Both the position numbers and the translations under genes were made by a program. Under the pieces are notes generated by a model. The model was not told the DNA's origin and did no database searches. It worked only from the letters and a program-made list of their open reading frames with translations. Positions 53,550-64,000 of a stretch of 64,000 bases of DNA are shown in pieces (positions within the stretch are counted from its first letter, which is position 1; every line of letters starts with the position of its first letter). This stretch comes from Adineta vaga (Eukaryota > Animalia > Rotifera), in assembly GCA_021613535.1 (NCBI GenBank), contig CP075492.1, positions 2,666,001-2,730,000 of the forward strand. Reading direction: 5' to 3'.

Positions 53550-54731
53550 ATGCGATTTCTTCGATTTCTTTTATTTGCTTTGATTTCTTTTCATTCCAAT
53601 ATCCATGGAAAGAAAACTTATTCAATCAGAAATGCAAATGTAAAGATTATTCCAAATAGTTTTTATCAACCAGGATATTATAAACATTTCCTTGGTAGTC
53701 TTTTCAATATACAATCTTTATCAGATTGTATATATCAATGTCATGAAAATGAATATTGTCGAACAGCTATTTATTCATTCCAATCATTCATCTGTTTATT
53801 ATATGAAGAATTTAGTTTTCTTGGACAGATTCTTCCATCAACAGATCAATCGTTAATTAGTTTTTCATATTGTCCAGATCAATCAATCAATGAACTGACA
53901 CATGTTTGTTATGGTTCACAACTTCTATCTTCAGTAGCAATTGGAGATCTTTTTGATCAAATATTTGTTCAAACACCGATTGCAACATTTCCAGCATATG
54001 CACGATCATCGACATGGTCAACTACAATGGTTATATTTGCACCTATGTGGGGTGTTGATGTCTATTCAGCACATGATATTAATAATGATTATGTACGAAT
54101 GAAAAGACAAGCAATTGTACCTAACATAACTATTTTATCAATTGATTCAGATGATTTAGATTATTTTGCAATTGTTGAATCTTCTCCTGGAAGATTATAT
54201 CTGAGATCAAATTCAATGAATCAAACAATTTATCCAACAAAAATAAGAGGAACATGTATGTCTGATCAATATGTTGTTGTAATTCCATATTTCTCAACAA
54301 ATCAGACACTCTATGTTTATCATAAATTCAATAGAAGTCAAGCTTTTCTTTTACCATCACCTGCTAATGGTGTTGTGACTTGTTTAATATTAAATCAACG
54401 ATTATATATAGTTGGTTATCCACCAGATCCACCAATTCAATCAATACTACTCGATCCAAATCGAACAATAAATAACTATTCAATTGTTCTGAAAACAAAT
54501 CAGTGTCTACAAGCATTATATCCGTTAAACGTTGATTCATCTGGAAGATTATATAGTGTGTGCTTAAATAATACTGCTACACATATGATGATATTTACAA
54601 TAGATGGAACAATTCTTTCAAGAATTTATCATTCTTTTTTCAATTATACACAACTTGGAATAAAATTAACAAAATATCGTATTCAATATGCTGGAAGCAA
54701 TGCGACAAGTACAAATATTTATGAATTCTAA
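53550..54731 (+). CDS. Secreted PAN/Apple-like domain protein with probable beta-propeller C-terminus
   Basis: Signal peptide. SLSDCIYQCHENEYCRTAIY...CLLY (PAN Cys pattern). Beta-rich remainder. Single exon. Confidence 0.65.
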   Translation: MRFLRFLLFALISFHSNIHGKKTYSIRNANVKIIPNSFYQPGYYKHFLGSLFNIQSLSDCIYQCHENEYCRTAIYSFQSFICLLYEEFSFLGQILPSTDQSLISFSYCPDQSINELTHVCYGSQLLSSVAIGDLFDQIFVQTPIATFPAYARSSTWSTTMVIFAPMWGVDVYSAHDINNDYVRMKRQAIVPNITILSIDSDDLDYFAIVESSPGRLYLRSNSMNQTIYPTKIRGTCMSDQYVVVIPYFSTNQTLYVYHKFNRSQAFLLPSPANGVVTCLILNQRLYIVGYPPDPPIQSILLDPNRTINNYSIVLKTNQCLQALYPLNVDSSGRLYSVCLNNTATHMMIFTIDGTILSRIYHSFFNYTQLGIKLTKYRIQYAGSNATSTNIYEF

Positions 54732-54841: not shown

Positions 54842-57800
54842 TTAGCTTTGAGAGTTTTCAGCAACCATCCATAATCGATAATATTCATTTTTTTGTGCTA
54901 GTAAACTTTCATGCGAACCTTGTTCCGATATATGACCTCGATTAAATACAAGAATTTGATCACAATGCTGAATAGTCGTTAAACGATGTGCAATAGTCAA
55001 TGATGTTTGATTTGAGATAGATCTTTGAACATTATCAAGTGCTTGTTGAACGAGCTAGAAAAAGAAATAAATAAAAATAACGTGTTAAAAATCTCTTACT
55101 TTTTCGGATATATTATCAAGAGCAGCAGTAGCTTCATCACATAGAAATAGAATTGGTTTACGAAGAAGAGCTCGTGCAATTGCAACACGTTGTCGTTCAC
55201 CTCCACTCAATTGTGAACCTTTGGAGCCACATATTGTTTCATAACCCTATATAATAATAAACAAAGTTAGAATTATTTAGACGTAACAACCTACCTTTGG
55301 CATATTAACAATAACATCATGTATATTCGCAAGTTTTGAAACATGATAAATTTCTTCATCGGTTACTGTTCGTTCCAATTGACCATAGGCAATATTATCT
55401 CGTATACTTAGATTAAACAGAACAGGTTCTTGTTGAACAACACCAATAATAGATCGTAACCATTGAATATTAAAATCACGTAAATCATGACCATCGAGTA
55501 GAATAGAACCTTTTCGGGGATCATAATAGCGAAGAAGAAGACTAACAACCGTCGATTTTCTATATATAGAAATATAAATATGAGTATTTCTTTCATGGGA
55601 TAAACTTACCCATAACCTGATTTTCCAATCAATGCAGATGATGTATGTGGTAAACAAGTATAAGAACAATCTCGTAATACTAACTTGTTCTGACGCATTG
55701 GATAAGAAAAATAAACATTTTTGAATTCAATTCTACCTTTAATCTGATCATTTGTCTATTAATAATAACATACAACTAACAAAGACTATTTTAAATAAGA
55801 AGATCTTACCAAAATGATACCTTTGTTTGTACTAATAGAAGGATCTAGATGATTGTCGTTTAATCAATGAAAAGATTCGTAGAGCTGCTGTTCGAGCTTT
55901 GGAATATTGAGGCATCATTGAAATACTTTGACCAACTGCTGTAGCAGCAAAAGTAATAACAATAAATATTCTAAAGGGAAAAAAAACGTCTAAAAGTTTT
56001 CTCTATAATTTAATTTCTACCGAAAAACTTCATCGACAGTCATTTCATTATTTTCAACTAATTTTGAACCATAGGTAAATGTTGCGATATGTAAAAAGAA
56101 AATTAAAGAATTTGATATACCATAACCGATAGCTCGTAGATGAATTTTAGGAAGAAAAGCACTAGATGACAATGAATTAAAACGACATTTTAGTTCAAAA
56201 TTACTTACGAAAAACTCTTATTAAATGCATTTTCAAATATTTCAATGAAATATTCTTCACATCCAAGTGACACGACAGTACGTATCTTATTAAATACTTC
56301 AGTTGCACACTATATTATAGTAGAGTCAAAATAGAAATGCATAGCAAAGAAAAATAATATGAACCTGTGCTCCTTGATCAGCCCAATTATTTGCTGATTT
56401 TGTTTTACCTGATTTCGACTGACTTTGTCCTTGTAAAAGACCGGAAAAAGCCATTAAAGGAGCAAAACAAAACATAACAAATGCTAATTTCCATCCTGCT
56501 TGAAATGAAATAACAATAGCTGTTACAAGAGCACCGACTGCTTGTAAGATTACTCCTATTCGAATTCCTGATAGGCCCTAGAAAAAGGCTCATTTATATC
56601 TAACCAATCATGTAGAGTATTCTTACTTTCAATGCTGATGCATCTGCCGAAAGTCGCGTAGTTAAAGCACTCACAGAATTTTTTTCCATATCAAAAAAGC
56701 CGATTTCTTGTCGAAGCATCGCTGAAAATGCCATTAGACGCATACGTTTAGTCAATCGTTCTCCTGAGACAGCAAATGCCCATATCATAGTCCATATAAA
56801 CATTCCATCGATTAGATGTAAGAAGAAAATGATTAAAGCAAGATTACGTGTTTGTTGAATTTGATTATCGAGATCAGTATTTGCATATTGATGATAAACA
56901 GATGAAAAAATAACACCAACTATTGGTTCAGTTGCACCAGCTAACATAGCAGCAACTGTACCAAAGATAATATATATCCATTCTGATCGATTAAAGCTAA
57001 GTAAACGAATAACTAAAGATCGATGATTACAACACAATCTTCTATTCTGTTTTGGTTTGGTAATAGATTGTTCATTGATATCTTCCATTACTTGGAGTTC
57101 ATCGAGATCTATTGAACTTGATAATGATGATGTTGTTCTCACTATAAGAATAAAGAATAAGTTTTATTTAAAATTTTCAATTGCATTCAGATTGATACTT
57201 ACAATTATTATTATTTAGTTCATGTTCAGAAATGATATCTTCATTAGGAATTTCTGTATTTAAAGTCAGTTCCTGTGCTTTGACCAATTGGAAGTAATGA
57301 TCTTCATTATGCATAAGTTGATCATGTGTACCAATTTCCACAATACCTTTGTGATGTTTCATTGTTATGATTAAATCAGCATTACGAATAGTCGAAAGAC
57401 GATGTGCTATAATAATTGTCGTACGACCTAATTTAGCTTGATTGAGAGCTTGTTGAACAATTCGTTCACTAGCATTGTCTATAATAACATATATAATCAA
57501 TAGAAATTTATTTTAGTATACCTAATGCTGAAGTTGCTTCGTCAAGAAGAAGAATCTTTGGATTGCCAACAAGTGCTCTTGCAATAGCTAGACGTTGTCG
57601 TTCACCACCAGACAATTTCTCATCAACAATGGTATTATAATTCTATTTATTGATGTAAAAACACTATTATAAGGAAATAATGTACAAATATTTAAAATTA
57701 TACTTGATCAAGTTTATTCATAATAAATTCATGAATATTTGCCATTTGACAAGCTTGAATTATTTCTTCTAATGTTGCATCTTCTTTTCCAAGACGAATA

Positions 57801-59905
57801 TTATCTTCGATGGAAATAGAAAATAATACTGGTTCTTGATTAACAATACCGATATTCGAACGAAGCCAAGCAAGATTTAATGATTCAATCGAATGATTAT
57901 CAATAAGAATCTTCATTATTGGATACGAAAAAAAGAAGATCAATCTATCTGTTTCAAGAAGAATTGAACTTTAATTACCTGACCCGATTTCGGATCATAG
58001 AATCTGAGTATCAATTGAATAATGGTACTTTCTATAATAAGATACAATATAAGATAATACTGAGGAAATATAACATGATTATGAAATATTACTTCCACAA
58101 CCTGTATCTCCAACAATAGCAACCGTTTGTCCTGCTACTATTCTAAAATTCAAATCTTTAAAAACCTATAAATTCAACAGTTTTGTATTCATAAGAATAG
58201 CAATCAAAATAGACTAACTTCAATATTACGAGATGGAAATTGAAATTGTACATGTTTAAATTCAATTGAGCCAACAAATGAATTCAAAATCTGACCAGTA
58301 TTGGACGATGAATCAATCGTAGATTTCTAAAATTTCATACAAATGACATTATATATATATATGATATTTTGAATAGAATTGTATCTATTACAATACCTGT
58401 TCGAGTAACTGTAAAATAACGTCGAATGTTCCGATTGATTCAGCAATGTATTGAATATTTGGAGTAAGTGTTGCTACACACATGATTGATGTTAAACTAG
58501 CCATAAAAATCTAATATGAAAGAATAAGAGAAAACAATCAATAAGAAAATATTTCTTACCACAATCAAATTTCCAGCAGAATACGCTGAAAACAAAACGA
58601 GATATGTAAGACATGATTGACTTTAATATATGATTATACCTGTGCATTCCGATCGTAATAAATATGGACCATACCATGCAGCTAATGCAAAAATAATTCC
58701 AACAGTTGTATTGGTTACGGCGACAAAGTCCAATAATAACACCTTTACGAATTCCTATTTTATATACTTTATTTAAACTATTTTCATATCTAAAATTAAT
58801 TTTGAATGAACAAAAAAATAAGAAATCGGAATTTCTTCGAAAAATTTACCTATTTTCCTCAGTTTTTTGTCCATTAAAAGCTGTTACCGTACGTATTGCA
58901 TCCAATACTTCATGGACAATTGTATTTGTTTCTGCACAGACTTTCGCTTCTTTAGTAGCAAATTTGACAATACTCTAGATATAAAAGAAATTAAATACTT
59001 TCTTATAATATATGTATAAGATATAACATACCTTAATAGTGATATTGAATGCAATGATAATCAGAGGAGCAATACTGATAAAAACAAGCGTTAATTTCCA
59101 ACCTTTGATTAAAGAAAAGACTACACAACCAATAGCTCTTGCCACTGATGAAATGAATTCAATCATTTTATCTGACATGCCCTCTTTGATTTTATCTAAT
59201 TCTTCAATAAGATGATTACTCAAAGAACCTGTACTCTGTTGATCAAACCATCCGATATTTTCATGTAAAATATGACGAAATAAAAGAAATCTAATATGAA
59301 GATACAGATCATAAATATATAACTATTCTTATACCGTATACGTCGAATTTGACGTTCAGCTGATGTTAACCAACAAGAAAAACAAAGCCAATAGAAGAAA
59401 ATATTTAAAAAGCCAAGTATCAAATACCATTTGAGAACGGCAAAAATTTCTTCATGTGGCCGTATGTTTAGATTTAAAATTTGAATACTATTGAGAAAAT
59501 AAAGAAGATGTTTCGTGTTCGTGAGATTCGCTACACTGAGATCTTACCATCCAGAAGAGCCTTGCTGGAAAAGGCTACTATTTGAAAAATTTCCTCCATT
59601 TTGTGTGTGAATACTCTTGATTTTACTATAATCTATCATAATATTAGCAACTTTTTGATAGACTTGAAGCATTACAGGAAATATAACTGCTATTGCCAAA
59701 GCAGCTAAGAAACCAATAGATAAGAGAATAATGTCAAATTTATCAGCAAATCCAAACTGTAATAAATAATACCATATGAAATACTTCAAATTAGAATATT
59801 TTACAAATCAGTTTATACCAATTCATGAACTTTTCGTATTCTTCTTTGTGATGTTTCGGATATAGTAAGTTTCTTTCTCTTGAAGAACCTGTATATACGC
59901 GTCAT
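54842..59905 (-). CDS. ABCB1: Full-length ABCB (P-glycoprotein/MDR1-like) exporter, many exons
   Basis: [35 protein letters not shown](K)[18 protein letters not shown] twice, [36 protein letters not shown] at 59905, TAA at 54844-54842. The symbol denotes subfamily, not proven orthology. Confidence 0.92.
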
Positions 59906-60813
59906 TAATCATAGATAATATCAGTGCGAATTTGATTTCATATTGTTCTTACCCGTTGATTTGACAACAAAAACGCATATTGAACCAATAGAGAGAAATA
60001 TTAAGACGCAAATGAATGAGTTGAAATTGAAATGTTTCTGTGAGAAAGGAAGAGAAATCAAGATTAACAATGACGCAGTCAATTCTTTTCTTCCATATTT
60101 CGATGTTTCAATTTTCAACGACGCCAAAAAAATGACGTTGTTGATATTTATATAAAATATCTGTCATTTGTTTTATGCGCAGAAAAGAAACGACAAATGT
60201 CCTGAAAAAGAAAAGGAAGTGATTCTAACGTATAAATATGTTCTGAAATAACAAAACCAGTATAATGTTGTTAGTAAGTACACTACATAGAGAACTAGGA
60301 GTATATAAGCATATTTTTCTTCTTGGAATCGTTCTCTTGAGAAAAAAAATATTCTCATAATTTACATGAAAACATATGAAGCAGTATACTTCAATCCAGG
60401 TAACGCTTTATTAACAAGAAGCTTGATAGAGTATAAGATCCCTATAAAATTCTTGATCAAATATATTATTTTTGCAAGTAATAAAAATCTCATTAATAAA
60501 TTCGGTAGTTGAATGTCTGATTGATTGAGTATAAAGTCACTGAGGAGAAATTAAGAGAAAAAGAAAAATCTCATTCAGATATTCGCAGCCATCTCAACTA
60601 TATAAATAATGTGAATGGTTGAAATGATCTGCAGAAAAATGATTCTGCTGTTGTGAACATTTCTAGACATATTCTTCCCATTTTCACTCACTTATAGTAA
60701 CAGAAAAACATATCATAATTTAAAGGGATCTACATTATCCCCGATTTGCGAGATATGTGACACAGTTCTTATTTCAAACACGTTTTTTTTCTTCTTTTTA
60801 GTAATCTACGACA

Positions 60814-63800
60814 ATGAATTCTAATAGTCTTCGCTTGACTAGTGAAAAGATCGATGATGAAGATTTTGCTGAACGTTTCTGTCAAGTCGCATGTAATCCA
60901 ACAGCGATTTGTATCATTCCTGATGAAACTTTCGGAAATCCATCAGAATATACTTATGGAACCATATATGATATGGTTTGTCAATTTCAACAAGAATTAC
61001 AAGCTATGCTTATCGAACCGAAAGGACTGATTGCTATTTGTATGGAACGAAGTGTTAATATAATTATAAGTGTATTAGCTTGTCTTCTTCGTCGATCTCC
61101 ATTCTTACTCATCGAACCATCTACACCGATGGCACGTCTTAAAATTATACTCAATGATGGAAAACCTGTATTATTAATTACTGATGAACAATTTTCAATT
61201 ATTCGTACTGATTTACCTACTTCAATGATTATTCGTTCCTATAAAGATATACAAAATCAAGAACATAAATCAAATGTTCATAAATCACTCGAAATACATT
61301 CATGTGATGATATAATGTATATTATGTATACATCAGGTTCAACTGGACAACCAAAAGGAGTCATAGTACCTTATCGAGCAATGTATAATCGATTTCGATG
61401 GATGTGGAAAGCTTATCCATGGACTACAAATGGTGTACAATTATGGAAAACATCAGTAGTATTCGGTGATTGTATATGGGAAATGCTTGGTGCTCTACTT
61501 TCTGGTGTGCCAACTGTCATAGGTTCTGCAACTACCGTTCGTGATCCATGTTTACTATTAAAATTAATTGAACAAAAAGCTATTACACGTATTACACTGA
61601 TTCCAACGATGCTTTCCTCTTTACTCAAACTATTACCTACAATGTCGGAATCGTGTATTCAATCATTGCGTTATGTTATTGTCAGTGGTGAAGCATTACC
61701 AAAAGCTGTATGTAAACAATTTTTATCATTATCATTAAATGCTCTCCTACTTAACCTATATGGTTCTACTGAAATTGGTAATGATGCAACATATTATGAA
61801 GTACGTCATGTAAATGATGAATATGATACTATTCCTATTGGAAAAACCATTACTAATATGTATTATAAGATTGTTAATGATGAATTATGGATAGCTGGTG
61901 ATGGACTTTGTCGTGGCTATTTAAATGATACTGAAAAAACAGCATGTAAATTTATATGTGATATTGATGGAAATCGTTATTTTAAAACAGGTGATTGTGT
62001 ACGTGAATGTATTCAAATCGGTGAATTGTTATTTTTTGGTCGAATTGATAATGTACAAGTCAAAATTCGTGGAGCACGTGTTGAATTGGAAGAAGTAGAA
62101 GCTATTTGTATGCAACATCCTTTAGTTCAAGAATGTGCTTGTTTTGTTCATGAAAAAAAAGCTCAATTGATTGCAATTATATATAGTACATCATCTGAAT
62201 TGTTGACAAATGAACTTCGACAATGGCTTTCTGAACAATTACCTGAATTTGAAGTACCATCTGTATTCATTTTCGTAAATGAACCTTTGCATCGAACAGC
62301 AAGTGGAAAAATTGATCGTAAACATTTAATTATTACATATGAAAATTGGAATAATGACAAGAATTCGAAACAACCTGTAATCAATACTTTAAACGATCAA
62401 AATGTAGAACGAATCATAAATTTATGGTGTAAAACATTAGAAATTTCAAAAATCAATCATTTAACATTTACTGAACTTGGTGGTCATTCACTTCTTGCTA
62501 TTCAACTTCAATGTGACATTCAATTTGAATTTAATATTCACGTACCGATCGAACAATTTTTTTGCCATACAACTCTTGATAATTTAATTGAATTTATCAA
62601 TCAATCAACACCGAAACAATCCATTTCTTTACCAAGTAAAAATGATTGTGAAAAAGTTCCATTAACACTTGTTCAGAAAAGTATCTGGATTGCCGATGAA
62701 CTTCAGAATAATCTGACAACACCAGTTTATACTGTAACGTGTGCATTCGAAATTTTATCCAATGATATATCAAATGAACGAATCAAGAAAGCAATTTCTA
62801 TTCTAATACAACGACATGATAGTCTACGTACAATTTTTTCTCGTGATACATCCGGTGAAATGTATCAAACAGTTACACTATTAAATAGTGAACATTTAAC
62901 TATAGCTGATAAAAGTATCTATCAAGAAATTACATTTGAAGATATCAATGAAATTGATCAAATCTTAAATCAATTATCGAAACAAAAATTTTATCTCGAT
63001 CAACCTCAACCACTTTGTCGATTTTATCTTTATTTAAATGCCAATTGTCGAATACTTGCAATTGTACTTCATCATCTCATCATTGATGGTTGGTCAATTG
63101 ATATTTTAACACATGATTTAGAAGCAATTTTATTAGAACAAAATCTTCCACCGATTACAATGCAATTCTATCAATATGCCATAATGGAACGTGAACTAAG
63201 TGCTTCAGCATATGATGATGATCTCATTTATTGGAAAAAACAATTAAGTAATGGAATGTTAACAGCAACACGTCTTCTTCATGATCATGAACCATTATCC
63301 ATAGATAATTCAACAATAGGACGTGTTCAAATCATATTTCCATCTGATATAACGAATTTAATTTATAATATATGCAAAGATAAAGATGTAACACCATTTA
63401 TGATCTTACTAACAACATTTGGTTCATTATTAACACGTTATACACAAGAAACAGATATAATCATTGGTACTCCTGTAGCAAATCGTACTCGATCAGAAAT
63501 CGAACATACTATTGGCATGTTTACAAATATGTTGGTATTACGAATGGACTTATCAACAAATCCTAACTTTAATGATCTATTATCTCAAACAAAAAAGACA
63601 GTACTCGAAGCATTTACTCATCAATCGTTACCATTTGTTAGTTTGTTAAGTGCACTTGAATATAAACAACGAAATCAATATCAAGATACATTCTTTCAAA
63701 TTATGTTAGCCTATCAAAATGTTGGAAATAAATCAAGAAATATCTTCCGAAAAATGACAATACATGAACAAACGGCGAAATTTGAACTTGATGTTCAAAT

Positions 63801-64000
63801 ATGGCCAGAAGCAGATAGTATGTTAATTGAAGCTTATTTTCGATTGGATCTTTTTAATACGAATACAATTGAACGATTTCTTGAACATTGGCTTCAACTT
63901 ACACGTTCAGCTTTATCTAAACCAATAGATTCACATATTCATTGGCCAATGACAATAACGAATGAAATATTATCAATTTCATCTCAAGAATCGAATAGAA
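60814..64000 (+). CDS. Non-ribosomal peptide synthetase (A-T-C..., truncated by window end)
   Basis: Frame from ATG 60814 appears open to 64000. A domain: YIMYTSGSTGQPKG, SGE, NLYGSTE, YFKTGD, GRID.QVKIRGARVELEEVE, SGKIDR. T domain: FTELGGHSL (Ser at 62488). C domain: RHDSLRT, HHLIIDGWS, IGTPVANR, IGMFTN, HQSLPF. Confidence 0.95.
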   Translation, partial: MNSNSLRLTSEKIDDEDFAERFCQVACNPTAICIIPDETFGNPSEYTYGTIYDMVCQFQQELQAMLIEPKGLIAICMERSVNIIISVLACLLRRSPFLLIEPSTPMARLKIILNDGKPVLLITDEQFSIIRTDLPTSMIIRSYKDIQNQEHKSNVHKSLEIHSCDDIMYIMYTSGSTGQPKGVIVPYRAMYNRFRWMWKAYPWTTNGVQLWKTSVVFGDCIWEMLGALLSGVPTVIGSATTVRDPCLLLKLIEQKAITRITLIPTMLSSLLKLLPTMSESCIQSLRYVIVSGEALPKAVCKQFLSLSLNALLLNLYGSTEIGNDATYYEVRHVNDEYDTIPIGKTITNMYYKIVNDELWIAGDGLCRGYLNDTEKTACKFICDIDGNRYFKTGDCVRECIQIGELLFFGRIDNVQVKIRGARVELEEVEAICMQHPLVQECACFVHEKKAQLIAIIYSTSSELLTNELRQWLSEQLPEFEVPSVFIFVNEPLHRTASGKIDRKHLIITYENWNNDKNSKQPVINTLNDQNVERIINLWCKTLEISKINHLTFTELGGHSLLAIQLQCDIQFEFNIHVPIEQFFCHTTLDNLIEFINQSTPKQSISLPSKNDCEKVPLTLVQKSIWIADELQNNLTTPVYTVTCAFEILSNDISNERIKKAISILIQRHDSLRTIFSRDTSGEMYQTVTLLNSEHLTIADKSIYQEITFEDINEIDQILNQLSKQKFYLDQPQPLCRFYLYLNANCRILAIVLHHLIIDGWSIDILTHDLEAILLEQNLPPITMQFYQYAIMERELSASAYDDDLIYWKKQLSNGMLTATRLLHDHEPLSIDNSTIGRVQIIFPSDITNLIYNICKDKDVTPFMILLTTFGSLLTRYTQETDIIIGTPVANRTRSEIEHTIGMFTNMLVLRMDLSTNPNFNDLLSQTKKTVLEAFTHQSLPFVSLLSALEYKQRNQYQDTFFQIMLAYQNVGNKSRNIFRKMTIHEQTAKFELDVQIWPEADSMLIEAYFRLDLFNTNTIERFLEHWLQLTRSALSKPIDSHIHWPMTITNEILSISSQESNR

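What the first reader, a model, noticed from the sequence alone, without database searches (positions are those of the whole stretch)
54842..64000. Head-to-head NRPS and ABCB exporter: candidate biosynthesis-plus-export gene cluster in an animal genome
Seen: an NRPS with no intron in its first 3.2 kb starts at 60814 (+), and a complete intron-rich P-glycoprotein-type transporter starts at 59905 (-), leaving about 0.9 kb of shared upstream DNA. Established: NRPS plus ABC exporter pairing is typical of bacterial and fungal biosynthetic clusters, and bdelloids are known to carry horizontally acquired NRPS genes. Inference: a foreign synthetase has been coupled to a eukaryotic-type pump through a bidirectional promoter for export or self-protection.
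Basis: partly seen in the sequence, partly recalled or inferred. Interest (0 to 1): 0.9.

Follow-up and report, generated by a model that had tools for sequence, protein, structure and literature searches.

The report
Rotifer NRPS-PKS gene paired with pump
In the bdelloid rotifer Adineta vaga, a bacterial-type peptide/polyketide synthetase gene sits head-to-head with an expressed, intron-rich P-glycoprotein-type pump; the pair has stayed together through a duplication and in a second bdelloid-like genome, but this synthetase locus, and pumps beside another such cluster, are already published.

Summary
The window is Adineta vaga Av20 chromosome 3 (CP075492.1). The synthetase is "cluster 3.3" of Nowell et al. 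2024 (PMC11258130).

- **Synthetase:** the ORF starts at 60814 and runs about 13 kb past the window. Its domains are A-T-C-A-T-C-A-T-KS-AT-(β-lactamase-like)-T-dioxygenase. The assembly shows one 1-nt frame break.
- **Pump:** the minus-strand gene (54842-59905) is a complete ABCB full transporter of 23 exons and about 1287 aa. It is spliced in RNA from three studies.
- **Promoter geometry:** the synthetase has a 528-nt 5'UTR intron (60274-60801), so the two transcript starts lie roughly 200 bp apart, not 0.9 kb.
- **Inheritance as a unit:** a 19-kb copy at 16.42 Mb ends at the two stop codons. An orthologous pair lies head-to-head in another bdelloid-like contig, about 8.5 kb apart. Flanking DNA is unrelated in all three places.
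- **Selection:** both genes are under purifying selection (ω about 0.3).
- **Against a conserved shared promoter:** the intergenic DNA is barely conserved between the paralogs (52% against 81.5% for introns).
- **Assembly quality:** the reference carries two 2-nt deletion errors in the pump, so the synthetase frameshift may also be an artefact.

Export coupling is plausible but untested. Pump-flanked clusters in bdelloids are already published, so this is a new member of a known kind. First-stage notes of this scan flagged similar pump-plus-synthase pairs elsewhere in this genome.

The parts
54842..59905 (-). ABCB (P-glycoprotein-type) full transporter gene, from start codon to stop codon. It has 23 exons, 22 GT-AG introns and about 1287 aa, arranged TMD-NBD-TMD-NBD.
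   Evidence: Spliced RNA contigs from three studies. Exon model built. Pfam ABC_membrane and ABC_tran found exon by exon. Best PDB matches are ABCB4, ABCB1 and ABCB11. The local translation shows Walker A, the signature motif and Walker B in both halves.
55845..55846 (.). Place where the reference lacks 2 nt inside a pump exon. This is an assembly error, not a real frameshift.
   Evidence: All contigs of three RNA runs and one DNA run carry 2 extra letters here, as two synonymous alleles. Paralog B also has them. The reading frame needs them.
58721..58722 (.). Second place where the reference lacks 2 nt inside a pump exon.
   Evidence: All four laid runs carry 2 extra letters here. Paralog B has them too.
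59906..60062 (-). Pump 5' untranslated region. The extent is approximate, estimated from how far the RNA contigs reach.
   Evidence: Contigs of X11 and X18 run on from exon 1 into the 59990-60189 bin with partial coverage. An island at 59937-59982 is conserved with paralog B.
60063..60256 (.). Divergent core-promoter interval between the two transcript starts, at most about 200 bp. It holds TATA-like strings facing each way (about 60146-60155 on the minus strand, 60231-60238 on the plus strand) and two TGACG motifs (60071, 60133).
   Evidence: Read from the sequence. Motif count. The starts themselves are inferred from contig ends and are not mapped.
60257..60273 (+). First, non-coding exon of the synthetase. 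At least 17 nt were seen.
   Evidence: In run X9, a 17-letter loose end of an RNA contig joined to 60802 matches 60257-60273, which is followed directly by GTAAGT. The donor block is conserved in paralog B.
60274..60801 (+). 5'UTR intron of the synthetase, 528 nt, GT...AG. The matching intron in paralog B is about 166 nt.
60802..64000 (+). Second exon of the NRPS-PKS gene, with the start codon at 60814. It continues without introns to C3:2739826, beyond the window.
   Evidence: Run X1 (DNA) and the RNA runs X9 and X11 have contigs in the 60790-60989 bin; X18 has none.
60895..62310 (+). Adenylation domain 1 (AMP-binding plus AMP-binding_C), with the core motifs present.
   Evidence: Pfam residues 28-370 and 427-499. 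Core motifs checked.
62407..62598 (+). Carrier (thiolation) domain 1, with the GGHS serine motif.
   Evidence: Pfam PP-binding at residues 532-595. Motif.
62653..63924 (+). Condensation domain 1, with the HHxxxDG motif.
   Evidence: Pfam Condensation at residues 614-1037, E = 7.8e-78. Motif at residue 753.

Best explanation
This is a two-gene unit in Adineta vaga.

Gene 1 is a horizontally acquired, bacterial-type assembly line. It has three NRPS modules, one PKS module and a C-terminal clavaminate-synthase-like Fe/2OG dioxygenase. Its coding sequence is a single 13-kb exon that has gained a eukaryotic 5'UTR intron.

Gene 2 is a divergently transcribed, intron-rich ABCB (P-glycoprotein-type) pump.

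Shown here: both genes are real and transcribed. Their transcript starts lie within roughly 200 bp. Both are under purifying selection. The pair has been copied and kept as a unit while the surrounding DNA changed.

Inferred: the pump carries the synthetase's product out of the producing cell, or keeps it away from the cell's own targets. Close linkage and a shared divergent promoter region would then favour joint inheritance and possibly joint expression.

The single frame break of the synthetase in the assembly may be an assembly error or a very recent change; this is also inferred.
For: Identity and prior record:
- C3 is 20,354,754 bp, the same as Chrom_3 CP075492.1. The cluster 'region3.3', CDS 2726814..2734886 plus 2734937..2739829, is listed with '1 frameshift, 4316 aa, CAS_like'.

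Synthetase:
- Domains. The dioxygenase matches At3g21360 at E = 1.7e-37.
- Catalytic motifs are present: HHxxxDG twice, carrier serines, KS Cys-His-His, AT GHSxG.

Pump:
- The pump is spliced in RNA of three studies. It is a complete ABCB full transporter.

Promoter geometry:
- The 5'UTR intron at 60274-60801 brings the two starts close together. Its donor and acceptor are conserved in paralog B.

Inheritance as a unit:
- The paralogous block C3:16420567-16439301 is 87-88% identical. Homology stops at the two stop codons.
- All 21 intron boundaries that could be aligned keep GT/AG in copy B; only the one after the diverged exon 1 could not be aligned.
- ABC: dS 0.22, ω 0.27. NRPS-PKS: dS 0.26, ω 0.32. 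ω is 0.31 downstream of the frame break.
- 15 of 18 indels in the 13-kb coding sequence are multiples of three.
- An orthologous pair lies on an ENA contig. Its synthetase is 65% identical over the first 620 residues and is a single 4347-aa ORF. Its pump is 68% identical, against at most 54% for 11 A. vaga paralogs. The two are head-to-head.
- Flanks are unrelated in all three contexts.

Genome-wide:
- 7 of 49 ABC_membrane loci lie within 50 kb of NRPS/PKS cores, against 1.6-2.75 expected.

Published precedent:
- ABCB1 and MFS genes flank a PKS-NRPS cluster in A. ricciae and are induced with it (PMC11258130).
Against: - No functional data link this pump to this product.
- The intergenic DNA is only 52% identical between the paralogs. 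That is like unrelated flanks (46-48%) and far below introns (81.5%).
- The orthologous pair is about 8.5 kb apart. A compact shared promoter is therefore not a conserved feature.
- Co-expression could not be measured. RNA run X18 has pump contigs but none over the synthetase 5' end.
- By my reading of the main text and a figure legend, this cluster is not among the two A. vaga NRP/PKS coding sequences reported as induced by the fungus. I did not check the expression tables.
- A 19-kb duplication would copy neighbours whatever their function, and the two A. vaga copies are one event.
- Only one other species could be tested. The Rotaria and Didymodactylos contigs hold too little upstream DNA.
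- The frame break at C3:2734832 was not checked against reads.
- No thioesterase or reductase release domain was found.
- The genome-wide enrichment is modest and counts the duplicated pair twice.
Confidence: 0.55

Rival explanations
1. The neighbours are not functionally linked. The pump is a general xenobiotic or lipid ABCB transporter that happens to lie next to the synthetase. The pair travelled together only because a small segmental duplication copies whatever is adjacent, and because close neighbours are rarely separated.
For: - The promoter DNA is not conserved between the paralogs.
- The spacing in the other genome is about 8.5 kb.
- The pump is assembled in every laid RNA run, whereas the synthetase 5' end is missing in one.
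- A. vaga has at least 49 ABC_membrane loci, most of them far from any synthase.
- Both gene classes are enriched near chromosome ends, which inflates chance adjacency (PMC11258130).
Against: - The duplicated block ends exactly at the two stop codons, with nothing else carried along.
- The orthologous pump, not a paralog, is next to the orthologous synthetase in a second genome with unrelated flanks.
- Both genes show similar divergence and constraint.
- The enrichment of pumps near synthases survives a control that keeps distance to the telomere (p about 0.016-0.07).
- There is a published case of co-induced flanking ABCB1 in A. ricciae.
Confidence: 0.3
2. The window's copy is a decaying duplicate. 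The synthetase frameshift is real, so only an A-T-C-A-T-C-A-T protein without its PKS and dioxygenase end is made here. The working pair, if any, is the copy at 16.42 Mb.
For: - The assembly has a 1-nt gap at C3:2734832 relative to paralog B, in a non-repetitive context.
- Nowell et al. list '1 frameshift' for this cluster.
- No protein of this copy appears in the protein database, while paralog B is annotated at 4290 aa.
Against: - The 1,664 codons after the break have no stop and show the same constraint as the rest (ω 0.31).
- All other indels there are in frame.
- The same assembly has two proven 2-nt deletion errors within 5 kb, in the pump.
- Paralog B, called 'intact', itself has two 1-nt frame breaks in the assembly. 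The annotation steps over them, which suggests a systematic assembly artefact.
- Nowell et al. also suspect that such defects are assembly problems.
Confidence: 0.15

Closest known systems
Bdelloid NRP/PKS clusters of Nowell et al. 2024 (Nat Commun 15:5787, PMC11258130), especially the A. ricciae PKS-NRPS copies flanked by ABCB1 and MFS transporters
   Same: - Same organism group, and a horizontally acquired bacterial-type synthetase.
- This very locus is their cluster 3.3 and its paralog is their region 3.7.
- A metazoan-type ABCB1 gene next to a synthetase is described there and proposed to export the product or confer resistance.
   Different: - Their transporter observation concerns another, heptamodular cluster in A. 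ricciae, with fungus-induced co-expression.
- For cluster 3.3 no transporter, promoter geometry, 5'UTR intron, unit duplication or cross-species linkage was reported in the text and tables I could read.
- By my reading of the main text, cluster 3.3 is not among the induced A. vaga genes.
Bacterial and fungal biosynthetic gene clusters with a dedicated ABC exporter or self-resistance pump
   Same: A core assembly-line synthase is physically linked to an ABC transporter, and the linkage is kept across lineages.
   Different: - There are only two genes. No tailoring, regulator or phosphopantetheinyl-transferase genes are nearby.
- The pump is an intron-rich eukaryote-type ABCB full transporter, apparently recruited from the host rather than transferred with the synthase.
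- Regulation would be by a eukaryotic divergent promoter.
Metazoan ABCB1/ABCB4/ABCB11 (P-glycoprotein family)
   Same: - TMD-NBD-TMD-NBD architecture, with Walker A, signature and Walker B motifs in both halves.
- The TMD2 exon aligns collinearly with residues of about 695-825 of ABCB1 and ABCB4 at E about 1e-29 to 3e-30.
   Different: - It is a lineage-specific bdelloid paralog, at most 54% identical to 11 other A. vaga ABCB-like loci.
- Its substrate is unknown.
Animal-encoded NRPS/PKS pathways acquired or retained in other invertebrates (surveyed in PMC10531068; bursatellin pathway, PMC11869996)
   Same: A modular synthetase is encoded in an animal nuclear genome.
   Different: I did not read these papers for transporter linkage. 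They appear only as hits.

Membership tests
NRPS-PKS hybrid megasynthase | Adenylation, carrier and condensation domains in modular order, with their core motifs | tested here: met
   Pfam finds three AMP-binding, three PP-binding and two Condensation domains. Motifs found: SGSTGxPKG three times, HHxxxDG twice, and the carrier serines.
NRPS-PKS hybrid megasynthase | Ketosynthase with Cys-His-His, acyltransferase with GHSxG, and an acyl carrier domain | tested here: met
   Pfam finds ketoacyl-synt N and C, Acyl_transf_1 and PP-binding. TACSS, HGPGT, NIGHT, GHSSG and GIDSL are read in the translation.
NRPS-PKS hybrid megasynthase | One uninterrupted reading frame | tested here: inconclusive
   The assembly has one 1-nt frame break at C3:2734832. 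Constraint is unchanged after it, and the same assembly has proven indel errors nearby.
NRPS-PKS hybrid megasynthase | Terminal release domain (thioesterase or reductase) | tested here: not met
   Pfam finds no Thioesterase or NAD_binding_4 domain. The protein ends in a carrier domain plus a TauD/clavaminate-synthase-like domain. A weak β-lactamase-like stretch shows no SxxK motif in the 100 residues scanned at its start.
ABCB full transporter (P-glycoprotein/MDR type) | Two transmembrane domains and two nucleotide-binding domains in one chain, with Walker A, signature and Walker B motifs in both | tested here: met
   Exon-wise Pfam hits to ABC_membrane in both halves and to ABC_tran in both halves; the first-half hit is below the curated cut-off. 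Motifs were read in the locally built translation. The joined model was not sent to any search tool.
ABCB full transporter (P-glycoprotein/MDR type) | Closest relatives are ABCB1/4/11 rather than half-transporters or other ABC subfamilies | tested here: met
   One 171-aa exon gives ABCB4, ABCB1 and ABCB11 at E = 3e-30 to 2e-27. Mitochondrial and bacterial-type half transporters score E = 1e-6 or worse. No tree was built.
Biosynthetic gene cluster with dedicated exporter | Physical linkage of synthase and transporter, kept across lineages | tested here: met
   Head-to-head in copy A, in copy B and in an orthologous pair on ENA contig ctg355370, with unrelated flanks. Only one other species was informative.
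Biosynthetic gene cluster with dedicated exporter | Co-regulation of synthase and transporter | tested here: inconclusive
   Contigs of two RNA runs cover both genes. One run has the pump only. Contigs cannot give expression levels.
Biosynthetic gene cluster with dedicated exporter | The transporter moves the product or protects the producer | not testable with these tools
   This needs metabolite identification and a transport or knock-down assay.
Bidirectional (divergent) promoter pair | Two divergent transcription starts less than 1 kb apart | tested here: met
   The start codons are 908 bp apart. Synthetase exon 1 lies at 60257-60273, and the pump transcript reaches about 60040-60062. The starts are inferred from contig ends, not mapped.
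Bidirectional (divergent) promoter pair | Conserved shared regulatory sequence | tested here: not met
   The intergenic DNA is 52% identical between the paralogs, with only four short collinear islands. No similarity to the other genome's spacer was detected.
Horizontally acquired gene in a bdelloid | Nearest relatives outside bdelloids are non-metazoan, and the gene is integrated in the host chromosome with host features | tested here: met
   Outside bdelloids, the listed hits that carry a name are almost all bacterial synthetases (one is fungal, Linnemannia), all at about 27-34% identity. The gene lies on a 20-Mb chromosome between animal-type genes, has a spliced 5'UTR intron and host-like GC content. 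No phylogeny was built here; Nowell et al. give one.

The most novel reading that the evidence does not exclude
The synthetase and its pump form a selected 'make-and-export' cassette. On this reading the animal recruited one of its own ABCB genes to a foreign assembly line early in bdelloid evolution. The cassette has since been kept together, moved and duplicated as a unit. It would be driven from one divergent promoter whose synthetase side reaches the coding exon through a 5'UTR intron of variable length, possibly about 8 kb in the other genome.
Probability: 0.35. Interest if true: 0.65.

Novelty: new member of a known kind. Interest (0 to 1): 0.45.

Why it matters
Bdelloid rotifers are the clearest case of animals using horizontally acquired biosynthetic genes, and whether these genes form working pathways is still open. 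A foreign synthetase that stays next to a host-derived pump through a duplication and in a second genome would show how an animal genome builds a minimal gene cluster from foreign and native parts. It would also point to a concrete gene pair for expression, metabolite and transport studies.

The value is limited by prior work. The locus is already catalogued and the pump-next-to-synthetase idea is already published for another cluster.

A practical by-product is that small indel errors in the Av20 assembly create false frameshifts here. This bears on how many of the 'defective' clusters in that catalogue are really defective.

Tried and rejected
- **Whole-ORF protein search.** It timed out, so I repeated it on residues 1-620.
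- **N-terminal fragments in other bdelloids.** The search gave only one Didymodactylos fragment. Its contig has 1.2 kb of upstream DNA. The Rotaria and Didymodactylos full-length contigs have 4.7 and 1.4 kb upstream and no pump. None of these is informative.
- **Repeat or transposon in the intergenic region.** Rejected: the 908 bp are unique in the genome.
- **Terminal repeats at the edges of the duplicated block.** None found.
- **Wider synteny.** Flanks of copies A and B and of the other genome show no similarity at the protein level.
- **First exon models of the pump.** Two constrained searches found no open path and one ran through oversized introns that skipped real exons, until the two reference deletions were recognised.
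- **TGACG (bZIP-like) motifs in the shared promoter.** There are 2 in 369 nt in copy A and 2 sites in copy B, against about 1 per kb in the background. This is too weak to claim.
- **Expression of cluster 3.3 in the supplements of Nowell et al.** The cluster is not cross-referenced to gene models in the tables held.
- **Literature search for rotifer, ABC transporter and biosynthetic gene cluster.** It found nothing beyond Nowell et al..
- **Joined pump model.** I did not send it to any search tool. Exons were searched by reference. The joined translation was built only inside scripts, to check frame, length and dN/dS.
- **Not attempted:** adenylation-domain specificity codes and product prediction.

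Full report
**Where the window lies.** The window is G000:C3:2666001-2730000 of a 100.8-Mb genome in six contigs. Contig C3 is 20,354,754 bp. That is exactly the length given for Chrom_3 (CP075492.1) of the Adineta vaga Av20 assembly GCA_021613535.1 in Supplementary Data 9 of Nowell et al. 2024 (PMC11258130). A near-identical paralog is annotated at NCBI as an Adineta vaga protein.

**The synthetase.**
- Translation from 60814 (+) is open to the window end (1062 codons). It holds AMP-binding, PP-binding and Condensation domains.
- With the downstream DNA fetched, the frame stays open for 2,690 codons. A second frame then runs for 1,664 codons.
- Together they read A-T-C-A-T-C-A-T, then KS-AT, a weak β-lactamase-like stretch, a carrier domain and a TauD-type domain.
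- The last domain matches the clavaminate-synthase-like protein At3g21360 at E = 1.7e-37. The β-lactamase similarity is marginal (E = 0.004), and I saw no SxxK motif in the part I scanned.
- The catalytic motifs of both condensation domains, all carrier domains, the ketosynthase and the acyltransferase are present.
- No thioesterase or reductase release domain was found.
- This is cluster 'region3.3' of Nowell et al., with CDS 2726814..2734886 and 2734937..2739829, noted there as '1 frameshift, 4316 aa, CAS_like'. The synthetase itself is thus already catalogued.

**The pump.**
- Three runs proved to be RNA: X9 (2024), X11 (2018) and X18 (2025). Their contigs carry 25 joints of 43-70 nt with GT..AG ends on the minus strand. 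The DNA run X1 carries none.
- No open reading path existed until I noticed that every contig of all four runs has two more letters than the reference after 55845 and after 58721.
- The paralog has the same two extra letters. At 55845 the two read alleles give synonymous codons.
- These are assembly errors, not frameshifts. With NN placed there, the gene is 23 exons, 22 GT-AG introns and about 1287 aa.
- It is a complete TMD-NBD-TMD-NBD transporter with Walker A, signature and Walker B motifs in both halves.
Single exons, given by reference, hit ABC_membrane and ABC_tran.
- A 171-aa exon aligns collinearly with ABCB4, ABCB1 and ABCB11 at E about 1e-27 to 3e-30. This is far better than with half-transporters.

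**The space between the genes.**
- In run X9, an RNA contig that begins at 60802 carries 17 further letters. These match 60257-60273 exactly, and GTAAGT follows directly. Position 60800-60801 is AG after a pyrimidine run.
- The synthetase therefore has a short non-coding first exon and a 528-nt 5'UTR intron.
- Pump contigs run on from exon 1 to about 60040-60062.
- The two transcript starts are thus roughly 200 bp apart or less, with TATA-like strings facing each way. Contigs cannot prove starts, so this geometry is inferred.
- The 908 bp are unique in the genome.

**The pair as a unit.**
- A second copy lies on the same chromosome at 16,420,567-16,439,301 in the same orientation. It is Nowell's region 3.7.
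- Homology covers the two genes only and stops within a few bases of the two stop codons. There are no terminal repeats and no similarity in the flanks, even at the protein level.
- All 21 intron boundaries that could be aligned keep GT/AG in copy B. Only the one after the diverged exon 1 could not be aligned. Exons 2-23 are open.
- Divergence and constraint are alike for the two genes. The pump has dS 0.22 and ω 0.27. The synthetase has dS 0.26 and ω 0.32.
- A 4347-aa orthologous synthetase is encoded as one open frame on a 628-kb contig of ENA assembly ERZ26165376. It has the same domain set and is 65% identical over the first 620 residues.
- Upstream of it, on the opposite strand, lies a full ABCB gene whose start is about 8.5 kb from the synthetase start.
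- Over 17 exons that pump is 68.4% identical to ours. Eleven other A. vaga ABCB-like loci reach 42-54%. It is therefore the ortholog.
- The flanks of this contig match neither A. vaga copy.
- The Rotaria and Didymodactylos contigs with the orthologous synthetase hold only 4.7, 1.4 and 1.2 kb of upstream DNA and say nothing either way.

**What speaks against a conserved shared promoter.**
- Between the paralogs, exons are 91.4% identical and introns 81.5%. The intergenic DNA is only 52%, close to the 46-48% obtained for unrelated flanks.
- Only four short collinear islands remain. Two of them are the donor and acceptor of the 5'UTR intron, which is about 166 nt in copy B.
- The other genome has an 8.5-kb spacer with no detectable similarity. 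A short string after a possible acceptor just upstream of its start codon resembles ours. The spacer could be a long 5'UTR intron, but this is untested.
- Contigs cannot give expression levels. X9 and X11 have contigs over the synthetase 5' end and X18 has none, while all three have the pump.
- Judging from a figure legend and the main text, Nowell et al. report only two A. vaga NRP/PKS coding sequences as induced by the fungus, and those belong to other clusters. I did not check the expression tables.

**Is the synthetase broken?**
- Against copy B, copy A lacks one base at C3:2734832. Copy B lacks one base at each of two other places. The other 15 indels in the 13 kb of coding sequence are all multiples of three.
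- Read through with an unknown base at the break, inside a script only, copy A is open for about 4,337 codons. Constraint after the break equals that before it (ω 0.31).
- The NCBI model of copy B (4290 aa) steps over its two breaks with short gaps.
- Two proven deletion errors lie within 5 kb in the same assembly. The frame breaks may therefore be artefacts, as Nowell et al. also suspected.
- I could not test this. Read laying allows one call, and a protein search across the junction was blank.

**Context.**
- The neighbouring genes encode a PAN-domain protein, a VIT/VWA protein, a Castor/Pollux-type channel and GPCR-like proteins. No tailoring enzyme is linked, so the 'cluster' is two genes.
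- Genome-wide, 7 of 49 ABC_membrane loci lie within 50 kb of an NRPS/PKS core. The expectation is 1.6 under uniform placement and 2.75 when distance to the chromosome end is kept (p = 0.001 and 0.016).
- The duplicated pair counts twice in this test and the hit lists are lower bounds, so the enrichment is suggestive only.
- First-stage notes of this scan list several other synthase-plus-pump candidates in this genome. I used them only as a prompt for this test.

**Verdict.** The reading 'foreign synthetase coupled to a host pump for export' is reasonable and is strengthened by the paralog and ortholog linkage. It remains an inference, and the bidirectional promoter as the conserved coupling device is not supported. 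Nowell et al. 2024 already catalogue this cluster and describe co-induced ABCB1 and MFS genes next to another bdelloid PKS-NRPS cluster. This is therefore a new member of a known kind, of moderate interest.

Noticed in passing
window 55845-55846 and 58721-58722: Here the Av20 reference lacks 2 nt inside coding exons of the pump. Every contig of three RNA runs and one DNA run, and the paralog, has them. Such small deletions create false frameshifts in this assembly.
   Followed up: yes
window 60891-60894: There is an in-frame 3-nt length difference near the N-terminus of the synthetase. RNA contigs of X9 and X11, and a third of the DNA depth in X1, carry three extra letters. Paralog B has a 3-nt insertion at the same place. 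It looks like an allelic in-frame indel.
   Followed up: partly
window 60357-60799: In DNA run X1, contigs covering this part of the 5'UTR intron run into unlike sequence on both sides, yet the stretch is unique in the reference genome. This is probably structural variation between haplotypes or strains within the intron.
   Followed up: partly
G000:C3:16428891 and 16432606 (copy B; L011, L012): Paralog B, called 'intact' in the published table and annotated as a 4290-aa protein (I4U23_016144), has two 1-nt frame breaks in the assembly. The annotation bridges them with short gaps.
   Followed up: partly
G000:C4:3638102-3645220 (L030): A ketosynthase hit on the minus strand and an ABC_membrane gene on the plus strand lie about 3.3 kb apart in divergent orientation. 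This is a second head-to-head synthase-pump pair. Its pump is only 42% identical to ours.
   Followed up: no
G000:C5:10278275-10281216 (L028) and C3:16467689-16468234 (L031): Further ABCB-like genes lie 17 kb beyond the large NRPS array at C5:10.18-10.26 Mb and 28 kb beyond copy B of the present synthetase.
   Followed up: no
G000:C1:14100572-14103157, C3:5153914-5156400, C3:929427-931952, C1:670319-672820, C6:12033844-12036399, C1:15685786-15688365, C5:2066592-2069063: Several ABC_membrane genes have both transmembrane domains inside one long open frame of 1048-1283 codons, apparently without introns. The pump studied here has 22. Their origin, retrogene or foreign, was not examined.
   Followed up: no
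L006:3032-4174 (synthetase, between the AT and the last carrier domain): Where a ketoreductase would usually sit, there is a weak β-lactamase/serine-hydrolase-like stretch. I saw no SxxK motif in the part scanned. The same Pfam family is recorded for the Adineta paralog and the ENA ortholog.
   Followed up: partly
window 53550-54731: A 393-codon open frame on the plus strand has a PAN domain and ends about 110 bp from the pump's stop codon. It is not part of the duplicated block.
   Followed up: partly
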